Shown: positions 1,881 through 9,726, counted from the stretch's first letter. The stretch: 9,942 nucleotides of DNA from IMGVR_UViG_3300005977_000012:1-9942, one strand, 5' to 3'. The notes: generated by a model from the sequence alone, not told the origin. Program-made: numbers and translations.

Positions 1881-1909
1881 TATTTAAGTTTTCTGCACAA
1901 CCAGTTAGG
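1881..1909 (-). promoter_or_regulatory. Palindrome-BRE-TATA promoter module, copy 1
   Basis: Minus strand CCTAAC TG GTTGTG CAGAAAA CTTAAATA; aligns gap-free with copies 2-5. Confidence 0.8.
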
Positions 1910-1957
1910 AGGAAAAGAGGTTGAGGCGAGTGAGGAGGAGGGAAGAAAGAAGATATC

Positions 1958-1999
1958 AAACAGATGTTTATGAGAAGAAATAAATAAAAAACGGGTTAG
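1958..1999 (-). terminator. Conserved cassette 3' module A (oligo-T terminator + AAACAGnTGTTT palindrome)
   Basis: Plus strand AAACAGATGTTT-14 nt purine-rich-ATAAAAAACGGGTTAG, 9 nt past the stop of ORF 2009-2542. Near-identical to 3011-3052. Confidence 0.75.
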
Positions 2000-2008
2000 T
2001 TTCAGATT

Positions 2009-2542
2009 TCAGAGTACCTTATCATAATACTCCCATTCCCTTCTTTTCCTCTCCTCCAAATACTCTTCCAAATATCTGTCGATACATTGTATGATATCGA
2101 TATCGTTGATCCTCGAGTCATTTGAATCATCAACATACGCCATGTTACCAGGCTTCGGCATGATCTCTATAAACTTTTTCAGTATTGTGTGTGCCTTCGG
2201 ATCGCTTAGTATATCCCATAGTTCATTGTAATAGTGCATCCCATACTCTAAGATAACAGTTTCTTTAATGCCGTCAGTGTCCACATTGACTTCTTTTATC
2301 GTTATTATTGCTGAATTTAGTGGTGCAAACACCCATAAGCTAAACTTAAAGTACTTACCATGTAAAAGTTGGTAGATTAATCTGTTGTTCTGTTTGTCTA
2401 CCTTTGCAGGTCTTAAAAACTTGCCCCTTGCAAAGAGTAGTTCATGTTTAATGCTTTCTGTTATATGACCGTCTGTTCTATGCCTACTTGTTGCACTATA
2501 ATGCCTACTTGTTACACTATACTCTATTTCTTGCCTTGCCAT
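2009..2542 (-). CDS. Hypothetical protein, ~177 aa; possible distant AcrIIIB1 (SIRV2 gp48)-like family member
   Basis: ATG at 2542 is preferred over TTG at 2554, which lies only 20 nt from the TATA box, at or before the expected TSS. The pattern FLRP...YxLLxGKYxKFSLW...DPxAxxILKxFI resembles, from memory, Sulfolobales virus proteins of that family; unverified. Confidence 0.8.
   Translation of the reverse strand: MARQEIEYSVTSRHYSATSRHRTDGHITESIKHELLFARGKFLRPAKVDKQNNRLIYQLLHGKYFKFSLWVFAPLNSAIITIKEVNVDTDGIKETVILEYGMHYYNELWDILSDPKAHTILKKFIEIMPKPGNMAYVDDSNDSRINDIDIIQCIDRYLEEYLEERKRREWEYYDKVL
2480..2521. repeat. 21-bp in-frame tandem duplication (YSVTSRH/YSATSRH)
   Basis: ATGCCTACTTGTTGCACTATA (2480-2500) and ATGCCTACTTGTTACACTATA (2501-2521); 1 mismatch. 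Confidence 0.95.
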
Positions 2543-2574
2543 TCTTTTCCCCAATATACTTTCGATAACGAAAA

Positions 2575-2610
2575 TATATAAATTTTCTGCCTAACCTATT
2601 AGGCAGAAAA
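2575..2610 (-). promoter_or_regulatory. Promoter module copy 2 with a perfect 28-bp inverted repeat
   Basis: TTTTCTGCCTAA-CCTA-TTAGGCAGAAAA (2583-2610) abuts TATA box TTTATATA (2575-2582, minus strand). Confidence 0.85.
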
Positions 2611-2686
2611 GGATAGAATAAACACCGTATACCATCCTTCAAGACGCGGAGCAGATCGAGGGCTTGGTACGGCGAAAACAACTCTA

Positions 2687-2727
2687 AAATAGCTGTTTGA
2701 AAAAAGAAAGGATAAAAAACGGGTCGG
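2687..2727 (-). terminator. Conserved cassette 3' module B
   Basis: Plus strand AAATAGCTGTTT-13 nt purine-rich-ATAAAAAACGGGTCGG, 8 nt past the stop of ORF 2736-2921. Confidence 0.7.
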
Positions 2728-2735
2728 CTTTTAGG

Positions 2736-2921
2736 TTACGATGTAAGCGAATATAACTTATATAACTCCATCTGGATTTTTTGCACAGCAAAATAAGCTT
2801 CACCTAGCTTATTTTTGTCCAGATTATCCTTCTTAATCTCATCAACAAATTGTTGCAACTCACTGAGATCATTTTTTAGCATTTCTATGATTTTGTCCAC
2901 CATTATTTCATCCGGGTTCAT
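2736..2921 (-). CDS. Small helical hypothetical protein, 61 aa, probably leaderless
   Basis: ATG lies 25 nt downstream of TATA TTTAAATA (2947-2954). The ORF is bracketed by the promoter and terminator modules and has an amphipathic helical pattern. Confidence 0.8.
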   Translation of the reverse strand: MNPDEIMVDKIIEMLKNDLSELQQFVDEIKKDNLDKNKLGEAYFAVQKIQMELYKLYSLTS

Positions 2922-2931
2922 TGCACTTAAT

Positions 2932-2994
2932 TATTGTTAAGGCTGGTATTTAAATCTTCTGCCCAACTAGTTAGACGGGAAATGACGAGCTGGA
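2932..2994 (-). promoter_or_regulatory. Promoter module copy 3; 63-bp direct repeat of 3282-3344
   Basis: 61/63 identical to 3282-3344 (offset 350 bp). Core on the minus strand is TCTAAC TA GTTGGG CAGAAGA TTTAAATA (2947-2975). Confidence 0.9.
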
Positions 2995-3010
2995 TACGCC
3001 TAAAACTCGA

Positions 3011-3052
3011 AAACAGCTGTTTGCGAGAAGAAGCGAATAAAAAACGGGTTAG
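3011..3052 (-). terminator. Conserved cassette 3' module C
   Basis: Plus strand AAACAGCTGTTT-GCGAGAAGAAGCGA-ATAAAAAACGGGTTAG, 6 nt past the stop of the 3059-3259 ORF. Confidence 0.75.
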
Positions 3053-3058
3053 ATTAGC

Positions 3059-3259
3059 TCACATCGAAACACTGTCCTCGTCGTAACCATAGTCGAAATC
3101 TGCGTCGTCAAATCTATACACAACATTAGTGCAGTCCTCCTCGTCGTAATTGTCTAGACAAAGCTCTTCATACAGCATTTCTAGCATTTCATCTTTTTCA
3201 TCTTTTTTCGTCCACTTCTTCTTTTTGGGAGTGAGAGTCTTTTTGGGAGTGAGAGCCGT
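3059..3259 (-). CDS. Unannotated 66-aa basic-N/acidic-C protein with ACG at the start position (non-canonical start or start-lost pseudogene)
   Basis: Minus strand GAGGTG-TTCTAG-ACG, then an open frame (M)ALTPKKTLTPKKKKWTKKDEKDEMLEMLYEELCLDNYDEEDCTNVVYRFDDADFDYGYDEDSVSM*. It fills the slot between promoter copy 4 and terminator C. Confidence 0.7.
   Translation of the reverse strand, partial: TALTPKKTLTPKKKKWTKKDEKDEMLEMLYEELCLDNYDEEDCTNVVYRFDDADFDYGYDEDSVSM
3220..3255. repeat. 18-bp perfect in-frame tandem duplication
   Basis: TCTTTTTGGGAGTGAGAG at 3220-3237 and 3238-3255 (LTPKK repeated). Confidence 0.95.
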
Positions 3260-3281
3260 CTAGAACACCTCAATTATCAAC

Positions 3282-3344
3282 TATTGTTAAGGCTGGTATT
3301 TAAATCTTCTGCCCAACTAGTTAGATGGGAAATCACGAGCTGGA
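3282..3344 (-). promoter_or_regulatory. Promoter module copy 4; direct repeat of 2932-2994
   Basis: Core 3297-3325 is identical to 2947-2975; AACAGCTGTT lies at 3344-3353. Confidence 0.9.
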
Positions 3345-3392
3345 ACAGCTGTTGTCTAAGAGCTTAAAAACAAGTTTCCCCTAGATTAAAGT

Positions 3393-4346
3393 ATGGCTAT
3401 GGATTTTCGTCAGGAAGAAGGCAATAAAAACATCGTCAACGACTCATTTGAATTCTTCGTCGATCTCGTCAGGACGAGTCCAAAACGCACTAAGGCTGAG
3501 AAAACATCACTTAAGGTTACTGAATTAGCTAAAAACGGTTTTGTCGTAACAGCAAAAATTAGAACTTTGACTGCTTCGGGTTTTCCAGAGGTATTTGATA
3601 AGCTTGCGGAAAAGGCTGACGAGTTTGCTAATTCAGTATCGGAATTTACTGGGGCTGAGCTAATTGATGATAAAAATTACAGGGTCAGGGAAGCCTCAAT
3701 ACTCTCCTTTTTAATATTAACAGACGCTATGAAGTCCTTAAAAATACTTGAGAAGCTGGACAACCTAATAAATAAATTAACTCTGCGTGAATACCTTTAC
3801 CTCTACAACTCCAAACTCCCCTTGCTGAACGCGGAAATAGGAGATATCCTAAGGTTTGCGAAGGAGGTGTGCGGTGACGCCTGCAATAATTTATCTGTTG
3901 AAAATCTCCGCAACGGGCTTGTCCCTCTTCTGCTAATGGGTCTAAGCAGTGAGATCAGTCTGGACGAGGAAGGGAAGAAGAAGAGGTATATGACTACGGG
4001 GTTAGGATTATACATTCTTAATTTCTTAAAATCTCATAACACGTATACCCTGGATAAGGCAAGTTATAAAGAATTAATACGCAACCTGAATAATATATTC
4101 GATTTGCATAAATTTATCGTCAAAAATATATCGGATCTTATAAACGAATCCCCGATGTCTATCTATTCGAGATACTACGGAGACAAGAGCTATTCTCCAG
4201 GCTTATTAGAATTAGACATGGCAAATTTTATGCTAAGTATCGCTTATCAGTACGACGAAATGTCAAGTAAAATATCGCCGAGATACTTAGCTGACTTTCC
4301 GAGGTTGAACCTAAATTATATATTAAATAGGATTATCTTGGCTTAG
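3393..4346 (+). CDS. Hypothetical protein, 317 aa, with a probable internal winged helix-turn-helix
   Basis: Long ORF divergent from the cassette array, with TATA-like CTTAAAAA at 3364-3371 (leaderless). The segment LSVENLRNGLVPLLLMGLSSE...GKKKRYMTTGLG fits the wHTH recognition helix + wing pattern (LxxLxxxGL...Yx[LT]TxxG). Confidence 0.8.
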   Translation: MAMDFRQEEGNKNIVNDSFEFFVDLVRTSPKRTKAEKTSLKVTELAKNGFVVTAKIRTLTASGFPEVFDKLAEKADEFANSVSEFTGAELIDDKNYRVREASILSFLILTDAMKSLKILEKLDNLINKLTLREYLYLYNSKLPLLNAEIGDILRFAKEVCGDACNNLSVENLRNGLVPLLLMGLSSEISLDEEGKKKRYMTTGLGLYILNFLKSHNTYTLDKASYKELIRNLNNIFDLHKFIVKNISDLINESPMSIYSRYYGDKSYSPGLLELDMANFMLSIAYQYDEMSSKISPRYLADFPRLNLNYILNRIILA

Positions 4347-4353
4347 ACTTTCT

Positions 4354-4376
4354 AAAAAGAGAAAGAGAAAAAAGAA
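4354..4376 (-). terminator. T-rich terminator at convergent junction
   Basis: The minus strand reads TTCTTTTTTCTCTTTCTCTTTTT right after the stop of ORF 4377-4583. Confidence 0.55.
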
Positions 4377-4583
4377 TTATTGACTTTGTGGTTGGTTTTT
4401 GGTGTTGTTTTGTTTAGGCTTGGGTTTGAAAACGATTACCTTATTTTGTGTGTCTAAGAATGGGTCATAATCATCGACTAAAAACACAGCTGATTTCCCC
4501 GGCACAGATATATAATAGAGGGGGTATACCTTACCGTTTTTTTTCGTTGATTTTATCCTCCATCTGAGCTTTATTTCGACCAT
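4377..4583 (-). CDS. Small basic AbrB/SpoVT-like (swapped-hairpin) DNA-binding protein, 68 aa
   Basis: The called GTG at 4595 is part of the GGTGA RBS, so ATG 4583 is preferred. KKNGKVYPLYYISVP...NKVIVFKP matches an AbrB-like beta-hairpin pattern. Confidence 0.6.
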   Translation of the reverse strand: MVEIKLRWRIKSTKKNGKVYPLYYISVPGKSAVFLVDDYDPFLDTQNKVIVFKPKPKQNNTKNQPQSQ

Positions 4584-4641
4584 CTGTGTTTTCACCTATT
4601 ATATAATTATGAGTTATAGCCTTAAAAAGTGGTCGAGATAG

Positions 4642-5370
4642 TTAGGCAGAAAGCTTACGCAAGATTTCGACGGCGTCTTTTGTCTGAGTGTATCGTACAA
4701 TATATCTGTAATCTTGATGACCCGTTATCTTCGCAATAAGTGCGGGGTCTGTGGCATTTTTTACAAGGAAGGAGATCGGTGCGTATCGTAACGAATGTGT
4801 ATTAATCTTCAGGTACTTCCGTGCAAACATTCTTAGCCTCGCTTTTAGTTTATCATCAGCGATTGTGAGTATCGATTTGTACGCTGATCTGTTTCTGATA
4901 ACCTCAGGAATAATGAAGACCCTTGTATTACCGTGCTTTTCTGCTTGAAGCCAGAACTCCCTTTGTCCTGACTCAACAAACGTCTTAAAAGCCCTTATCG
5001 CCTCGCCTATTCTAGCTCCGTTTAACAGCTGTATGAGGAGGATAGCGACGTACGCCTCCTGGGGCATCAAGTTGATATCAAACAGCTGTTTGTACGCAGA
5101 CGTGAGTACTTTCTTTGCTTCGAGGAAATCCACGGAGTAGTCCCAACTGTGTTCTATCTTCTTCTTGCCGAGCGGTCTCAGGATCTTCTTAAGTAACTCA
5201 CTCTCCTCTCTCTTTCCTTTCTTCTTCTCCTCCTTCAGCCCCAGCTTCACTGCGATAAGGTCGACGATATCCTTCCATCCCTTCTCCCTAGCTTCTTTAA
5301 GATACTCCAGAAGTTTAGGAGAGTTGTCTGGAAGGTTCTGAATTATTTGTTTAAGTTCGTCCTTGTCCAT
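4642..5370 (-). CDS. int: Tyrosine recombinase/integrase, short form (~242 aa)
   Basis: Catalytic set R (NGARIGE), K (AEKHG), HxxR (THSLRY), H (TGH) and Y (VRYTQ). ATG 5370 follows the methyltransferase stop (alternative GTG 5379). Confidence 0.92.
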   Translation of the reverse strand: MDKDELKQIIQNLPDNSPKLLEYLKEAREKGWKDIVDLIAVKLGLKEEKKKGKREESELLKKILRPLGKKKIEHSWDYSVDFLEAKKVLTSAYKQLFDINLMPQEAYVAILLIQLLNGARIGEAIRAFKTFVESGQREFWLQAEKHGNTRVFIIPEVIRNRSAYKSILTIADDKLKARLRMFARKYLKINTHSLRYAPISFLVKNATDPALIAKITGHQDYRYIVRYTQTKDAVEILRKLSA

Positions 5371-5375
5371 TTTTC

Positions 5376-5999
5376 TCACATCCCTTTAGAACTATACTTG
5401 TCAATCACGTTATCATGTTCTAAATTGAATACACAAACGTCAATGTTAGTATTAATTTTGTCTTTCTCCTTTACGTTGCAAAACGTTATCCATACAACTT
5501 TTTCTGAAACCTTATTGAGCATATTCAGGATTTCATCATGTTTGTCCAGTCCCGAATAAACCCCTACATCATACTTGCCCAGGTACTGCAGGTCATCTTC
5601 TGTTACATACTTGATGACGTAGTTGAGGCTAAGCCCCTTTTCCACCACCTCTGGGAAAATGTAGTTACTGTAAATTACAGCATAAGGAGCCCAGCCTTCG
5701 AAAGTATCTACATGTTTAGCATAATGCGACAATACATAAGCTAAATACCCGTTACCTCCTCCTATTTCAATTACCTTCTTGCCCTTGACGATATCCACGA
5801 GTTTTTCAAGTTCCTTAATTTTACTCACGTCGTCGTAATCCCAAACCAACGGCACTTTCCAGCCTAAGTCCTCGTCTACTCTTGCGTATTTGATCGACAT
5901 CCTCATTGACTGTTTCTCGGCGTGACTGTCAATAGTGTAAATGATATTCTTAGGGATTATTTTAGGGCGTATTTCACCAATTTCCTTAAGTTCAATCAT
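5376..5999 (-). CDS. Class I SAM-dependent methyltransferase, substrate unknown
   Basis: Motif I VIEIGGGNGYLA, acidic residue after beta2 (VDTFE), KYDVGVY strand; GGTGAGG RBS. Confidence 0.85.
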   Translation of the reverse strand: MIELKEIGEIRPKIIPKNIIYTIDSHAEKQSMRMSIKYARVDEDLGWKVPLVWDYDDVSKIKELEKLVDIVKGKKVIEIGGGNGYLAYVLSHYAKHVDTFEGWAPYAVIYSNYIFPEVVEKGLSLNYVIKYVTEDDLQYLGKYDVGVYSGLDKHDEILNMLNKVSEKVVWITFCNVKEKDKINTNIDVCVFNLEHDNVIDKYSSKGM

Positions 6000-6010
6000 T
6001 TTTCCTCACC

Positions 6011-6244
6011 TTACTCCTCTTCATAGAGATCCATGTCCTCTTCCAGCTCCTCTTCCTCTTCTTGGCAGAGGATTTCGCATAAATCCCCGCATACCTCCCA
6101 TGTACAGTCCTCACAACTCGTTGCTCTACTGCAGATCTCATCTACTTCGTCCTCTATCTTTTCTATCTCTTCCTCATCTTCTTCTTCATAGAGATCCATT
6201 TCGTTTTCTTCCTCATCTTCTTCCCAATCTTCTTCCACTTTCAT
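6011..6244 (-). CDS. Extremely acidic small protein with a 6-Cys core
   Basis: 41 D/E in the 78-aa called ORF. Core CSRATSCEDCTWEVCGDLCEILC; MDLYEEE occurs twice. GAGGTG RBS; the start is ATG 6244 or GTG 6238. Confidence 0.85.
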   Translation of the reverse strand: MKVEEDWEEDEEENEMDLYEEEDEEEIEKIEDEVDEICSRATSCEDCTWEVCGDLCEILCQEEEEELEEDMDLYEEE

Positions 6245-6261
6245 CACCTCACATGAGCTTC

Positions 6262-6735
6262 CTACGAAAAATTCTCATTTAACATCGACGATGAAGAAGT
6301 AGATAACGACCACCCTTCATCGTAGCGTTTCACGTACTCAACCAGATGTTTGAACTGCATGAATTCGTAGACCTTGCACGTACCGTCCTTGAGTTTCACC
6401 ATAACCCTGCTGTCTGCGTTCTCAAGCACCAGTGCTTTACATAATACCTCGTTGTCATATCTGCCCAGGTCTCTCATTATAGGCTCTACGACTTCGAACT
6501 TAAGCCCACGGTTCTTGATCTCTTCAAGGAGCCTCATTTTGACGGACTCAGGTACCACAGGAATTAGCAGAACTCTTTCGTATGTTTTACCGTTGAAATT
6601 CCTCATCTCGTCTAGAAAGTCCTCAACGTTGTATATTCCTTTATTATATATTATGATATTATAGCCCGCGTCCTTCAGTACTTTCTCTTGGGCTGGTAAC
6701 AATTTCTCCCTGGAAACCCATATTGCGACCTTCAT
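6262..6735 (-). CDS. Hypothetical 157-aa alpha/beta protein; possible Csx15/16/20-like (ring-nuclease-like) fold
   Basis: GAGGTG RBS and ATGA overlap with the upstream gene. N-terminal WVSRExLLPAQxxxL and central PVVP resemble the SRH/SH...Q motif families (recalled, unverified). Confidence 0.8.
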   Translation of the reverse strand: MKVAIWVSREKLLPAQEKVLKDAGYNIIIYNKGIYNVEDFLDEMRNFNGKTYERVLLIPVVPESVKMRLLEEIKNRGLKFEVVEPIMRDLGRYDNEVLCKALVLENADSRVMVKLKDGTCKVYEFMQFKHLVEYVKRYDEGWSLSTSSSSMLNENFS

Positions 6736-7031
6736 GATGACACCTCAACGACAACTATTTCGAATTTGTTGGGGTCTATCCTGCCGTTATGAAGTCTCTC
6801 GGCTTCCGCTATCCATTCCTCAACGCTTTCAAATCCACTATAATCTGTATACTCACTTAGTGAGAAGGGTGAGAGAGGGGCTATTGCGATAACCTTACCG
6901 TAGAACTTCTTATCCCCTACTTTCATTACGACCTTTTTACCTACTCTATAGTACCCTTTCCTTCTAATCGTTGCAACTAATTTAGCTCCATTCAAAATGT
7001 ATTTTTGTACAGTAAATGAATTGAAAATCAT
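6732..7031 (-). CDS. ASCH (PUA-like) domain protein, 99 aa
   Basis: ILNGAKLVATIRR (GxKxxTxR) and SGFESVEEW motifs. The likely start is ATG 7031 (GAGGTGA RBS, ATGA overlap with the upstream stop), not 7142. Confidence 0.85.
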   Translation of the reverse strand: MIFNSFTVQKYILNGAKLVATIRRKGYYRVGKKVVMKVGDKKFYGKVIAIAPLSPFSLSEYTDYSGFESVEEWIAEAERLHNGRIDPNKFEIVVVEVSS

Positions 7032-7351
7032 GTGTGGGTCACCTCGCTTATGAAAGGCTTTACTTCTATTTGATCTGTGAATATTCTCCATATGAAATCG
7101 TCTAGAGAAAGAAATCCGCATCCTCCCTCTACCTGTAGGCATTTGAAATGTACTTCAGAACAATACCAAGGCTCTTTGAATACTACGTCGAAATCGGCTA
7201 TGTACCCCAAATAATCCATATATAGTATAATTCTCAGCTTCTGCAATCCCTCTTTCAAGACGTTTAAATAGTCGATTAGGTCTCTCATTTCTTCCTCATT
7301 TAGTTCATCTTTGTCATGTAATTTTCTAACAATTTGCCATAAATATTTCAT
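7028..7351 (-). CDS. Hypothetical protein, 107 aa
   Basis: AGGTGA RBS overlapping the upstream stop; coupled to neighbours on both sides. Confidence 0.8.
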   Translation of the reverse strand: MKYLWQIVRKLHDKDELNEEEMRDLIDYLNVLKEGLQKLRIILYMDYLGYIADFDVVFKEPWYCSEVHFKCLQVEGGCGFLSLDDFIWRIFTDQIEVKPFISEVTHT

Positions 7352-7362
7352 GCAGAGGTCAC

Positions 7363-7593
7363 CTAACTCTGGAGGTCTATGATAATATCTTCTATCTCTT
7401 CTACTATTTCTTCAATATATTCCAACCTACTTTTGAGAAATTCCCGTTCGTTAAATTGTTCTTCATTAAGATTTTCATCAAGATATGCATCAATTTTCTT
7501 AATCATATCTTTGATACTATCTTCAGCATTCTCTAAATCCAATTGGGCGTCTTTCAAATAATCTATAATTTCCTTATACGGAGTATCGACCAT
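7363..7593 (-). CDS. Acidic coiled-coil/helical hairpin protein, 76 aa
   Basis: GAGGTGA RBS; about 24 D/E residues; heptad-like hydrophobic periodicity. Confidence 0.8.
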   Translation of the reverse strand: MVDTPYKEIIDYLKDAQLDLENAEDSIKDMIKKIDAYLDENLNEEQFNEREFLKSRLEYIEEIVEEIEDIIIDLQS

Positions 7594-7604
7594 GATGGGT
7601 CACC

Positions 7605-8177
7605 TCACCCCTCCTCTTCAATTTTCCTTATTTCTATTTTAGTGTCATCACCAAACTCCACTCTGATTTTCTTGTACACACCAGGGATCTCTAAATATAG
7701 GACGTCAGCGTGGTTAAACCCAGTCCTCATCCTGACGTTTTCAACATCGTCAGGGTCTATAGGTTCGTTGCATTCGCTTATCTTGTATATAGAAGAAAGT
7801 GTAGCCTTGTTGCCTTCGACATCATATTCTAAAAGTACAGATAGTATTTCTCCACTTCTTCCTCTTATTACTCCGAATTCGTAAAATCTTGTATTTGAAG
7901 AATATATTATAATTGGAAGAGGAGCTATATCACATAAGGAAGACATTACAGATTTTAACATTAGATAGACGAATATTTTACTTATGTTACTATCTCCGTT
8001 TCTGTTCAGATTCTCACTAAGACTTGCAAGATGGACATAGAGACTCTCAAAACGCCGATGGGGTTCGAATTCATTTAGTTTGTCTTTTTTTATATTAAGC
8101 CACTCCCAAAAAAATTGAATTTCGTTCTCTTTATTTTGACTTAACTCCCTCTTATCGTTCATTTCGCTTTCCCTCAT
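7605..8177 (-). CDS. Hypothetical protein, 185-190 aa; first gene of a long leftward operon
   Basis: TATA-like TTTTTAAA at 8198-8205 (minus strand). Start is ATG 8177, or ATG 8162 with a GAGGG RBS. Confidence 0.8.
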   Translation of the reverse strand: MRESEMNDKRELSQNKENEIQFFWEWLNIKKDKLNEFEPHRRFESLYVHLASLSENLNRNGDSNISKIFVYLMLKSVMSSLCDIAPLPIIIYSSNTRFYEFGVIRGRSGEILSVLLEYDVEGNKATLSSIYKISECNEPIDPDDVENVRMRTGFNHADVLYLEIPGVYKKIRVEFGDDTKIEIRKIEEEG

Positions 8178-8279
8178 ATTATCCTCTCAAACAGAAGTTT
8201 AAAAAGCCCAACGAGTTTCGCTTTGGGCCGAAAGAGAAATGTTTTTAGTTCACCATTCCCATGTTTTATATGAGGGAAA
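8168..8279. promoter_or_regulatory. Divergent promoter region flanked by a 12-bp inverted repeat
   Basis: TTTCCCTCATAT (8168-8179) and ATATGAGGGAAA (8268-8279). TATA-like boxes on both strands, plus a degenerate palindrome GCCCAACGAGTT at 8206-8217. Confidence 0.6.
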
Positions 8280-8960
8280 ATGAAGGAAGTAAATTTAGAC
8301 GGATTGTTAAAAGCAGAATTAGTAAACATCGAAGAAAATAACGATAAGTTAAAAATAACGTTTAAGGTTACTGCCAGCGAGCCATTAGCGTTCAAACTTA
8401 ATAACAATGTTATTGCGATTACAGAACATTATGACATTTATGAAGTAGCTTTACAGGTATTTCCAGCAATAAAGCTCACATATTCAGTGAAAAATATTGC
8501 CACAGATAATAAAGAAATATCAACGTTTGAATATCTTATAGACATAGATACTCTGGGCTTCAGTGACTATGACGAATTTAAACAGTTTTTAATTAAATAT
8601 CCGAAATATATACGTTATCTGGAATTTGTGTACCGTCTCGTTAGCATGCGACCATGGTCATTCTTACTTAATATTTCTAGTATTTCATACAAAAATAATA
8701 TAAAATTTGGTAAAAATGAAATAGAAATAACTGTGGAAAAGGTACGCATCAGTAACTTCCTCGGGAAACACAATTTTAATGAAAATATAACGTTCAGAAT
8801 ACTGAACAGAAATAACTATGCAGTACTGTCTGTGGCAAATATCTCTCTTGTAGATTTCGGCATTAGTATTATGTATAATGACTTCATTAAAATACTAGAA
8901 GAAGAACCAAAACCAATATTGAACACATTAATAATGCTAATAATAACTCTACTAGACTGA
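8280..8960 (+). CDS. Hypothetical protein, 226 aa
   Basis: Long AT-rich ORF with a GAGGG RBS, followed by a T-rich tract at ~8988-9016. Confidence 0.8.
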   Translation: MKEVNLDGLLKAELVNIEENNDKLKITFKVTASEPLAFKLNNNVIAITEHYDIYEVALQVFPAIKLTYSVKNIATDNKEISTFEYLIDIDTLGFSDYDEFKQFLIKYPKYIRYLEFVYRLVSMRPWSFLLNISSISYKNNIKFGKNEIEITVEKVRISNFLGKHNFNENITFRILNRNNYAVLSVANISLVDFGISIMYNDFIKILEEEPKPILNTLIMLIITLLD

Positions 8961-9116
8961 CACGTTTAATTATGACCTAAAGCAAAAGTTTTTCCTTCCT
9001 CACCTATTTCTTTTCCCTGGAGCTGACCTCTGGGGGGGTCGAAAGAGAGAATAACTCCAACAGCTGTTTTAAGACTTTGCCATTCGTTCCGTTACCCTCC
9101 ATCACCCTACTTACCG

Positions 9117-9145
9117 TCTAACTGGTTAGACAGAAGGCTTAAATA
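9117..9145 (+). promoter_or_regulatory. Promoter module copy 5 (no ORF directly downstream)
   Basis: TCTAAC TG GTTAGA CAGAAGG CTTAAATA; palindrome GTCTAAC-TG-GTTAGAC at 9116-9131; AACAGCTGTT upstream at 9059-9068. Confidence 0.8.
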
Positions 9146-9194
9146 TTGGCGAGGCATAAATGCATATATCTTTTCTATTCTCATTTACTTTCAC

Positions 9195-9224
9195 CCTAAC
9201 TGATTAGGTAGAAAAGTATAAATA
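9195..9224 (+). promoter_or_regulatory. Promoter module copy 6
   Basis: CCTAAC TG ATTAGG TAGAAAAG TATAAATA, upstream of ORF 9259. Confidence 0.75.
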
Positions 9225-9258: not shown

Positions 9259-9726
9259 ATGACTACATTAAAATCCATAAAATCAGTAGTCATTGATATA
9301 ACACGCCTAGTTTTATTATTTCTAGTAATGTTTTTACCATTAATCTTTATAATCGTACTGAGTCAGTTAGCTGTATTGGCTGTAAAAATAGACTCACTAC
9401 TAGGAATTTTCTTGTTTTTACCTGCTGTTATACTTATGCATTATTTTCTTGGTAAGTACGGATCTATCTACAAATTAGTTTTCACAGGAGACGATATACA
9501 GTTTTCAGAAGAACACAAAGATATCAATATGGCACTGCTAGCAGGCTCAGCAATGTACTTAGTAACGATTATCGATATTTCGAGGCTTCTCATAAATACA
9601 CCTTGGTCTTTAACAAAAATTGGTCTAGGGATCATTATTGTACTTCTGCTCGTTTATGTTCTACATAATAGAAGCTACTATAATGCTTTAAAACTTATAG
9701 AAAAAATCTGGGGATTACTCTCCTAA
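9259..9726 (+). CDS. Membrane protein, ~4 TM helices; probably the N-terminal part of a disrupted longer gene
   Basis: Four long hydrophobic stretches and a GAGGGT RBS. The +1 frame continues from 9707 to the window end with only one stop (9812-9814). Confidence 0.75.
   Translation: MTTLKSIKSVVIDITRLVLLFLVMFLPLIFIIVLSQLAVLAVKIDSLLGIFLFLPAVILMHYFLGKYGSIYKLVFTGDDIQFSEEHKDINMALLAGSAMYLVTIIDISRLLINTPWSLTKIGLGIIIVLLLVYVLHNRSYYNALKLIEKIWGLLS

What the first reader, a model, noticed from the sequence alone, without database searches (positions are those of the whole stretch)
1881..9224. Six copies of a palindromic operator fused to BRE-TATA, plus two degenerate copies: a regulon
Seen (promoter strand): 1881-1909 CCTAAC TG GTTGTG CAGAAAA CTTAAATA; 2575-2603 CCTAAT AG GTTAGG CAGAAAA TTTATATA; 2947-2975 and 3297-3325 TCTAAC TA GTTGGG CAGAAGA TTTAAATA; 9117-9145 TCTAAC TG GTTAGA CAGAAGG CTTAAATA; 9195-9224 CCTAAC TG ATTAGG TAGAAAAG TATAAATA. 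Spacing to TATA is fixed to within 1 nt. Degenerate copies lie at 8206-8217 (GCCCAACGAGTT, 11/12 to copy 3, abutting the operon's TATA where the BRE should be) and 4639-4652. Established: archaeal activators bind just upstream of the BRE, while repressors overlap BRE/TATA. Inference: one dimeric factor could activate the cassette promoters and repress the integrase operon.
Basis: partly seen in the sequence, partly recalled or inferred. Interest (0 to 1): 0.7.

Follow-up and report, generated by a model that had tools for sequence, protein, structure and literature searches.

The report
Shared operator on archaeal virus promoters
Six strong promoters in this fragment of a Sulfolobus tailed-spindle virus carry the same 26-bp symmetric protein-binding site overlapping their TFB-recognition element; it is a real, virus-specific regulatory signal, but one already reported for the closest relatives, and it more likely switches these genes off than on.

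Summary
The window is an SMV3/SMV4-like Sulfolobus monocaudavirus contig. All six copies are at the stated coordinates (6 matches against 0 in shuffles).

It is a dyad, TTTC-N4-TAAC-N2-GTTR-N4-GAAA, and its promoter-proximal outer arm is the BRE itself. The TATA box follows 1-2 nt later. The same module precedes small genes in SMV1, SMV3, SMV4, YNP1 and about 50 metagenomic contigs. SMV2 and its close relatives carry a variant, CTTAC/GTCAG. ATV, ATSV and 185,579 cellular genomes do not have it.

The motif-bearing genes I find in SMV3 and SMV4 include every "anti-defence gene" I could read for them in Bhoobalan-Chitty et al. 2024. The motif is therefore already published for those viruses, and this contig is a new member.

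Because the site overlaps the BRE, repression is more likely than activation. In relatives the same site lies about 60-70 bp upstream of the TATA box of the two capsid genes, which are the "full-time/late" genes in SMV1a RNA-seq. That suggests a regulator whose effect depends on site position.

The best candidate binder is the small basic all-beta protein encoded at 4377-4583. The evidence for it is circumstantial.

The 4641-4652 copy is a genuine half-site at that gene's promoter. The 8206-8217 copy is not supported.

The parts
1881..1915 (-). Copy 1: operator (TTTC..CTAAC-TG-GTTGTG..GAAA), BRE and TATA. It drives the 201-aa and 243-aa virion-protein operon (1849 to 501).
   Evidence: The orthologous promoter is conserved in 12 contigs. 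ATG lies 32 nt after the TATA box.
2575..2609 (-). Copy 2: the most nearly perfect palindrome (11 of 12 arm positions paired). It drives a 177-aa homologue of the AFV1 ORF157 nuclease (2542 to 2009).
   Evidence: The gene matches PDB 3II2 at E 5e-18 and Pfam DUF3258.
2947..2981 (-). Copy 3: drives a 61-aa homologue of SSV1 D-63 (2921 to 2736). The transcript is nearly leaderless.
   Evidence: (PF20940, E 4e-20)
3297..3331 (-). Copy 4: a 95% identical duplicate of the 66-nt copy-3 promoter module. The reading frame behind it is interrupted by an in-frame TAG at 3260-3262. The longest intact ORF is 42 aa (3187 to 3059).
   Evidence: (family D1)
9111..9145 (+). Copy 5: the upstream member of a tandem pair, 78 nt before copy 6. 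No gene of its own follows (only a 15-codon ORF). It is either a second promoter for the 155-aa gene or a promoter left behind by a lost cassette.
   Evidence: The same pair occurs in metagenome contig L071.
9189..9224 (+). Copy 6: operator with ATTAG in the right arm and one extra nt before the TATA box. It drives a 155-aa membrane protein (9259-9726).
4641..4652 (-). Half-operator TTTCTGCCTAAC (minus strand). It consists of the last three codons and stop codon of the integrase, and lies 10 nt upstream of a TATA-like CTTTTTAAG (4621-4629) that precedes the 68-aa gene.
   Evidence: (I25)
4377..4583 (-). 68-aa basic all-beta protein of the SMV1 gp33 family (72 aa if translated from the GTG at 4595). 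It is the candidate operator-binding regulator.
   Evidence: This is an inference; binding has not been shown.
8206..8217 (-). It is not supported as an operator and belongs to a separate inverted repeat.

Best explanation
The six sequences are copies of one lineage-specific operator, about 26 bp long and dyad-symmetric (TTTC-N4-TAAC-N2-GTTR-N4-GAAA). It is built into strong archaeal promoters so that its TATA-proximal outer arm is the BRE.

The operator marks a set of single genes and short operons. In this window these are a nuclease-like protein, a D-63-like protein, a membrane protein, two virion-associated proteins and one decayed gene. This is the same promoter class that Bhoobalan-Chitty et al. 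2024 used to predict early/anti-defence genes in SMV3 and SMV4.

The proposed mechanism is inferred, not shown. A virus-encoded dimeric protein binds the dyad. Because the dyad covers the BRE, binding competes with TFB and shuts down these otherwise strong promoters once the protein has accumulated.

In relatives the same site sits about 60-70 bp upstream of the TATA box of the two capsid genes. There it cannot occlude the promoter and may instead sustain or activate transcription.

The most likely binder is the 68-aa basic all-beta protein encoded at 4377-4583, whose own promoter carries a half-site.
For: Reality and conservation. The window has 6 matches against 0 expected. The same module occurs in SMV1, SMV3, SMV4, YNP1 and about 50 viral or metagenomic contigs, in front of non-homologous genes. 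Modules fused to a TATA box number 1-6 per genome against 0.09 or fewer in shuffles, and there are none in ATV or ATSV. In the orthologous promoters the operator, BRE and TATA box form conserved blocks within otherwise variable intergenic DNA.

Overlap with the BRE. TTTC, which no search pattern constrained, mirrors GAAA.

A DNA site, not an RNA hairpin. The arms are conserved in sequence, and mismatched positions show no compensatory changes.

Virus-encoded specificity. The composite does not occur in any Sulfolobales genome among 185,579 species; the 14 single hits are all in unrelated organisms, about the chance number. SMV2 and two related contigs use CTTAC/GTCAG within the same frame.

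Agreement with the literature. The genes I find behind the motif are SMV3 gp46, 47, 48, 62, 69 and 71 and SMV4 gp02, gp40 and gp61. All of these SMV3 and SMV4 genes are listed in Supplementary Data 1 of PMC11065993.

Distal copies. SMV1/1a gp03 and gp11, and their SMV3 and SMV4 homologues, carry the operator far upstream of the TATA box. PMC12199143 reports gp03 and gp11 as the 'late/full-time' exceptions inside the early gene region. In SMV1 gp03 the spacer carries an 11-bp insertion, one helical turn.

Candidate binder. The family is present in exactly the genomes that have the operator (SMV1, 1a, 2, 3, 4, YNP1, YNP2) and is absent from ATV and ATSV. Its own promoter carries a half-site in the SMV1/3/4-like lineages and a full variant site in the SMV2-like lineages. 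The half-site is not imposed by integrase coding. The fused two-domain forms in the SMV2 lineage, whose two repeats have diverged, go with an asymmetric operator.
Against: No binding, transcription-start or expression data exist for this virus.

The candidate protein has no recognisable DNA-binding fold. The monomer model (pLDDT 78) and the tandem model (pLDDT 62) find nothing significant in the PDB. Neither Pfam nor PDB sequence searches give a hit.

Its co-occurrence with the operator is partly synteny and shared ancestry; the SMV2-type co-variation may be a single evolutionary event. A small basic protein encoded next to an integrase could instead be an excisionase.

Copy 1 drives genes annotated as virion proteins, which does not fit a purely 'early, then shut off' class. 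An activator that contacts TFB from a BRE-overlapping site cannot be excluded. The temporal class of the fused-operator genes is unknown even in SMV1a.
Confidence: 0.55

Rival explanations
1. The site is bound by a host (Sulfolobales) transcription factor that these Yellowstone viruses have co-opted. The viral small protein is unrelated to it, for example an excisionase.
For: The same core (TAAC-NN-GTTA) is used by viruses of two different groups, the SMVs and YNP1, which probably share hosts. No viral protein with a recognised DNA-binding fold tracks the motif.
Against: The composite is absent from all reference Sulfolobales genomes, although that scan required the fused BRE/TATA. The SMV2 lineage has a changed core while keeping the frame, which is easier to explain if the binder is encoded by the virus. 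ATV and ATSV, which infect related hosts, lack the site.
Confidence: 0.2
2. One of the small proteins transcribed from the motif promoters is the autoregulator, in the manner of Aca. Candidates are the D-63-like protein (flagged 'ADa' for SMV3 gp48 in PMC11065993) and the RHH protein (SMV3 gp63 / SMV4 gp58).
For: The D-63 homologue sits behind copy 3 and in most arrays. The RHH gene carries the fused operator in SMV1, SMV3 and SMV4. RHH repressors classically autoregulate.
Against: The D-63 homologue is absent from SMV1, SMV4 and YNP1, all of which have the operator. RHH homologues are present in ATV and ATSV, which lack it. SMV3 gp63 binds the different aCcr1 box (PMC9976878), and GTAATAC boxes lie downstream of the TATA box in the RHH promoters.
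Confidence: 0.1
3. The palindrome is a recombination or cassette-boundary signal, or simply a duplicated strong-promoter module spread by recombination. On this view no dedicated binder exists and the element acts only as an extended promoter.
For: The same 66-nt module precedes unrelated genes, and copies 3 and 4 are a recent duplication. A half-site lies at the end of the integrase gene. Gene content behind the promoters differs between contigs.
Against: Dyad symmetry beyond the BRE, distal copies detached from any TATA box in front of capsid genes, one-helical-turn spacing variation and lineage-specific core changes are not expected of a passive promoter module.
Confidence: 0.1

Closest known systems
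Virus-specific regulatory sequences of predicted anti-defence (early) genes in archaeal viruses, including SMV2, SMV3, SMV4, STSV1/2 and SYV1 (Bhoobalan-Chitty et al., Nat Commun 2024, PMC11065993)
   Same: Both involve a strong BRE/TATA with a shared flanking sequence in front of single small genes. The SMV3 and SMV4 genes listed there are the ones I find behind this motif. For SMV2 the paper already notes inverted repeats overlapping the BRE and suggests a repressor.
   Different: The paper holds the SMV3/4 motif only as a logo, which I could not read. It does not describe the full dyad, the distal copies at capsid genes or the gp33-family protein. It proposes other regulators: SMV2 gp37, and a D-63-like 'ADa' in SMV3. 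It also counts the major capsid protein homologue SMV4 gp02 and the virion-protein gene SMV3 gp46 as anti-defence genes.
Aca-type autoregulated control of anti-CRISPR promoters (Aca8 in rudiviruses; bacterial Aca1/Aca2)
   Same: In both, an inverted repeat overlaps the core of a very strong early promoter, and a small virus-encoded dimeric repressor is proposed to damp it.
   Different: No Aca8 homologue or HTH protein is linked to the motif here. The candidate binder is an all-beta protein of unknown fold, and it is not transcribed from a full-operator promoter in this lineage.
SSV1 F55 and SIRV1 SvtR (RHH repressors of archaeal viruses)
   Same: These are small viral proteins that bind repeated sites overlapping TATA/BRE or the transcription start of several viral promoters, setting the temporal programme.
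   Different: They are RHH proteins that bind tandem or other repeat types. The RHH protein of this virus group recognises a different box (PMC9976878).
Position-dependent dual regulators of Archaea (TrmBL1/Tgr of Thermococcales; Ptr2 and Lrp-type activators at upstream sites)
   Same: One site class acts negatively when it overlaps the core promoter and positively when it lies upstream. This fits the fused and distal copies found here.
   Different: Those are host wHTH/Lrp proteins with experimental support. Here the dual role is inferred from positions and from one published RNA-seq classification in SMV1a.

Membership tests
ADG-type regulatory promoter class of archaeal viruses (PMC11065993) | Predicted strong promoter: a consensus TATA box with a purine-rich BRE (G at -6, A at -3) | tested here: met
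   All six copies have YAGAAR followed 1-2 nt later by YTTAWATA or TATAAATA.
ADG-type regulatory promoter class of archaeal viruses (PMC11065993) | A conserved sequence around the promoter is shared by several genes of the same genome | tested here: met
   There are 6 copies in 9.9 kb against 0 expected, and the same module occurs in relatives.
ADG-type regulatory promoter class of archaeal viruses (PMC11065993) | The genes are single small genes not in operons | tested here: inconclusive
   Copies 2, 3, 4 and 6 precede single genes. Copy 1 precedes a two-gene virion-protein operon. Copy 5 has no gene of its own.
ADG-type regulatory promoter class of archaeal viruses (PMC11065993) | Immediate-early expression and anti-defence function of the genes | not testable with these tools
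   There are no expression data for this contig. In SMV1a the distal-operator genes gp03 and gp11 are 'full-time/late'.
Aca-like autoregulated repressor circuit | The regulator gene is itself under the operator | tested here: inconclusive
   The candidate gene has a conserved half-site here and a full variant site in SMV2-like contigs. Binding is untested.
Aca-like autoregulated repressor circuit | The regulator has a recognisable HTH or RHH DNA-binding domain | tested here: not met
   The candidate has no Pfam or PDB sequence hit, an all-beta model and no significant Foldseek match.
   Pfam, the PDB profile search and two Foldseek searches gave no AbrB-family hit. The beta-beta-alpha-beta-beta order per repeat in a low-confidence model is compatible with the fold but does not demonstrate it.
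aCcr1-box regulon (RHH aCcr1 and viral homologues, PMC9976878) | [quoted passage not shown] | tested here: not met
   The operator core TAAC-NN-GTTA differs from the published box and lies upstream of the TATA box. GTAATAC-type boxes occur separately in the RHH gene promoters.

The most novel reading that the evidence does not exclude
The SMV1-gp33 family (68 aa, all-beta, with no known relatives) may be a new class of sequence-specific transcription factor of archaeal viruses. On this reading it binds the 26-bp dyad as a dimer, or as a fused pseudo-dimer in the SMV2 lineage, where the operator core has co-changed. It would act in a position-dependent way: it would exclude TFB at BRE-overlapping sites of accessory or anti-defence genes, and sustain the two capsid-gene promoters from about 90 bp upstream of the transcription start.
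Probability: 0.3. Interest if true: 0.7.

Novelty: new member of a known kind. Interest (0 to 1): 0.42.

Why it matters
Transcription programmes of large spindle-shaped archaeal viruses are almost unknown, and no regulator of the SMV group has been identified. The motif has already been used as a bioinformatic flag for anti-defence genes.

This work shows three things about it. It is a full dyad overlapping the BRE. It also occurs detached from the core promoter in front of the capsid genes. It tracks one small uncharacterised protein family.

That cautions against reading every motif-bearing gene as anti-defence, because capsid and virion proteins are in the set. It also gives a concrete, cheap experiment: one 68-aa protein and two operator variants. 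That experiment could define a new archaeal viral transcription factor and explain the 'complicated' timing of the SMV1a capsid genes.

Tried and rejected
First collection scan: I miscounted the spacing, so it recovered only copy-6-type sites. I repeated it correctly.

Host regulon: the genome-contig scan gave 14 single hits, all in unrelated bacteria or archaea and none in Sulfolobales.

RNA hairpin reading: rejected, because mismatched arm positions never show compensatory changes. Rfam and tRNA scans of the window were empty.

D-63-like protein, 317-aa protein, integrase and RHH protein as universal binders: rejected on phyletic grounds. For the RHH protein the published aCcr1 box also argues against it.

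ATV 'homologue' of the small protein: this is a spurious 26-aa match inside an acetyltransferase gene.

Fold assignment of the small protein: the monomer model, the PDB profile search and the tandem model gave nothing significant.

The same ORF later came in through locus L052, fetched by the scan for the SMV2-type operator.

Widening the protein family: the IMG/VR scan added nothing new. The metagenome scan added 40 loci, which were used for the co-variation analysis.

The 8206-8217 site: it was scored and aligned and dropped.


Full report
What the window is.
The 9,942-nt window is IMG/VR contig UViG_3300005977_000012. It is about 82% identical over half its length to Sulfolobus monocaudaviruses SMV4 and SMV3 (Bicaudaviridae).

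Gene order:
- the 3' end of a polynucleotide kinase/phosphatase gene;
- on the minus strand, two 'virion structural protein' homologues (243 and 201 aa);
- a 177-aa homologue of the AFV1 ORF157 nuclease (PDB 3II2, E 5e-18);
- a 61-aa SSV1 D-63 homologue;
- a decayed ORF;
- on the plus strand, a 317-aa protein with no family;
- on the minus strand, a long operon from 8177 down to the integrase (4642-5379), followed by a 68-aa gene;
- on the plus strand, 226-aa and 155-aa genes.

Checking the observation.
A degenerate pattern covering them gives 6 matches against 0.00 in 200 shuffles. The similarity between copies is concentrated on the motif, the BRE and the TATA box. The exception is copies 3 and 4, which are a 66-nt, 95% identical duplication. 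Spacing to the TATA box differs by one nucleotide, and only in copy 6.

The element extends further than described. I used 35 distinct instances collected from relatives. The four bases TTTC, located 4-7 nt upstream of CTAAC, were in no search pattern. They carry 0.8-1.4 bits each and mirror the GAAA of the 'BRE'. The reverse strand of each site also scores as an operator.

The site is therefore a dyad of about 26 bp: TTTC-N4-TAAC-N2-GTTR-N4-GAAA. The inner AAC/GTT and the outer TTTC/GAAA are symmetric. The positions between them vary without any compensatory change. That pattern fits a protein-binding DNA site and not an RNA hairpin.

The two 'degenerate copies'.
The site at 8206-8217 scores 1.8 bits with the operator matrix. 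The best site in a shuffled window averages 8.2 bits. In SMV3 the AAC..GTT core there is lost, although the rest of that divergent promoter is nearly invariant. The bases belong to another inverted repeat, GCCCAA-N11-TTGGGC, whose stem changes in a compensatory way in SMV4. I do not count it as a copy.

The site at 4641-4652 is a perfect 12-nt arm without a partner (11.9 bits, marginal). It is conserved in SMV1, SMV3, SMV4 and in every single-domain metagenomic locus examined.

These bases are the last codons and stop codon of the integrase (..LSA* or ..LST*). Integrases of SMV2, YNP1, YNP2, ATV and ATSV, which are not followed by the small gene, end in AS, GS, AD or SD, with unrelated codons. 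Integrase coding therefore does not impose the arm. It goes with the promoter of the downstream 68-aa gene (TATA-like CTTTTTAAG at 4621-4629).

Distribution.
The composite (core, BRE and TATA box) occurs in 22 stretches of IMG/VR. There are 59 instances in 40 metagenomic loci. They often form arrays 320-900 nt apart, in front of genes that are not homologous between contigs.

In complete genomes the counts of TAAC-NN-GTT fused to a TATA box are: SMV1 1, SMV3 6, SMV4 4, YNP1 4, ATV 0 and ATSV 0. Shuffles give 0.09 or fewer.

SMV2 has five or six copies of a variant, CTTAC-NN-GTCAG, in the same frame. In IMG/VR that variant is found only in SMV2. Two metagenomic relatives also have it.

YNP2 has one degenerate fused copy and one core next to its own homologue of the small gene.

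In 185,579 reference genomes the composite gives 14 scattered single hits, none of them in Sulfolobales. The signal is therefore viral and lineage-specific.

What is already known.
Bhoobalan-Chitty et al. 2024 (PMC11065993) searched archaeal viruses for strong BRE/TATA promoters that share a flanking 'regulatory sequence' in front of single genes. They called the genes putative anti-defence genes (ADGs), and SMV2, SMV3 and SMV4 were included.

Their Supplementary Data 1 lists SMV3 gp46, 47, 48, 62, 69 and 71 and SMV4 gp02, gp40 and gp61. Those are the genes behind the sites I find; I also find sites at SMV3 gp63 and at SMV4 gp39 and gp58. I could not see their logos, because figures are not held in the library. 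The gene-for-gene agreement nevertheless makes it very likely that this is their SMV3/4 motif.

For SMV2 they already remark that inverted repeats overlap the BRE and suggest a repressor. The finding is therefore a new instance of a published promoter class.

How it probably works.
The first part is shown by the sequence: the dyad covers the BRE, so a protein occupying both arms would occupy the TFB site. By established archaeal precedent (repressors overlap BRE/TATA, activators sit upstream), the six promoters in this window are more likely repressed than activated by the binder.

The second part is inference from relatives. SMV1, SMV1a, SMV3 and SMV4 also carry the operator without an adjacent TATA box. 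In those cases the real BRE/TATA begins 52 nt after the 21-nt operator core scored (63 nt in SMV1 gp03, an 11-bp, one-turn insertion). These copies lie in front of two genes only, the homologues of SMV1 gp03 (major capsid protein) and gp11.

[quoted passage not shown] The operator offers an explanation: one factor acting negatively at BRE-overlapping sites and neutrally or positively from about -90.

This also shows that the motif class is not specific to anti-defence genes. SMV4 gp02 ('ADG.73') is the capsid-protein homologue, and copy 1 here drives virion-protein homologues.

Who binds.
The phyletic profiles among nine complete genomes are as follows:
- the D-63 homologue is found only in SMV3;
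- the 317-aa protein is found only in SMV4 and, distantly, in ATSV;
- RHH (aCcr1-like) proteins are also present in ATV and ATSV;
- the integrase is present in all nine.

SMV3 gp63 is known to bind a different box (PMC9976878). GTAATAC boxes sit downstream of the TATA box in the RHH promoters.

Only the 68-aa protein family (SMV1 gp33) matches the operator distribution. It is present in SMV1, 1a, 2, 3, 4, YNP1 and YNP2, and absent from ATV and ATSV.

Its own promoter carries a half-site in the SMV1/3/4-like lineages. In SMV2 and in contigs L062 and L063 it carries a full variant operator abutting the TATA box. In L064 it carries CTAAC-N6-GTTAG abutting the TATA box.

In SMV2-like viruses the protein is a fusion of two diverged copies of the domain, and the operator there is asymmetric (TTAC against TGAC). 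Single-domain proteins go with the symmetric operator.

The weaknesses of this case are considerable:
- The family has only close relatives and no Pfam or PDB hit.
- The monomer model (pLDDT 78, five strands) and the tandem model (pLDDT 62) match nothing significant.
- The co-variation may be a single event.
- An excisionase role cannot be excluded.

I put this assignment at about 0.4.

Verdict.
One degenerate copy is a genuine conserved half-site, though it lies at a different promoter from the one proposed. The other degenerate copy is not supported.

The 'regulon' reading holds. The proposed direction of regulation (activate the cassettes, repress the integrase operon) does not. The motif class has been published for the closest relatives, so the finding is a new member of a known kind. 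It has a testable extension: the dyad overlaps the BRE, distal capsid-gene copies exist, and there is a candidate regulator of a new family.

Noticed in passing
window 225, 1959, 2688, 3012, 3344, 5024, 5081, 9059 (10-mers); also SMV1, SMV3, SMV4 and ATV genome-wide: The palindrome AACAGCTGTT, often extended to the 18-bp CTCAAACAGCTGTTTGAG, is strongly over-represented. The window has 8 copies with at most 1 mismatch against 0.37 expected. Exact copies number 17, 20, 22 and 9 in SMV1, SMV3, SMV4 and ATV against about 0.06 expected, but only 0-2 in SMV2, ATSV and YNP1/2. It occurs in coding DNA (including a conserved copy inside the integrase gene) and in non-coding DNA. In the cassette region it lies between the T-run after the upstream gene and the CTAAC operator. 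[quoted passage not shown] Its distribution does not follow the CTAAC operator, so it is a separate element of unknown function.
   Followed up: partly
window 2929-2946 and 3279-3296 (minus strand, just downstream of the TATA boxes of copies 3 and 4); also the VP201 promoters of 12 contigs: [quoted passage not shown] The virion-protein promoters have a conserved GTTAG-containing block in the same place. A second operator may therefore flank the TATA box.
   Followed up: no
window 3188-3277: The gene behind copy 4 is broken. An in-frame TAG (3260-3262) follows a TTG start. An 18-nt tandem duplication lies at 3224-3259. Only a 42-aa acidic ORF remains intact.
   Followed up: partly
L044 (SMV1) about 41,770-41,985 minus strand; L053 (SMV1a) about 38,640-38,855 minus strand: An unannotated RHH (aCcr1-like) ORF with a GTG start lies behind the only fused operator of SMV1/SMV1a. 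It is antisense to the annotated 'gp40'. The aCcr1 paper, as far as I could read the passage, appears to say that SMV1 has no aCcr1 homologue.
   Followed up: partly
window 8178-8279: The divergent promoter region between the 190-aa operon and the 226-aa gene is almost invariant between the window, SMV4 and SMV3. It contains an inverted repeat, GCCCAA-N11-TTGGGC, with a compensatory change in SMV4. This is probably a separate regulatory site.
   Followed up: partly
window 5376-7351: The genes between the integrase and the 76-aa gene (a 207-aa methyltransferase-like protein, a 78-aa acidic protein, and 136-aa and 107-aa ORFs) have no counterpart in SMV1-4. This is a variable insertion inside the conserved operon.
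   Followed up: no
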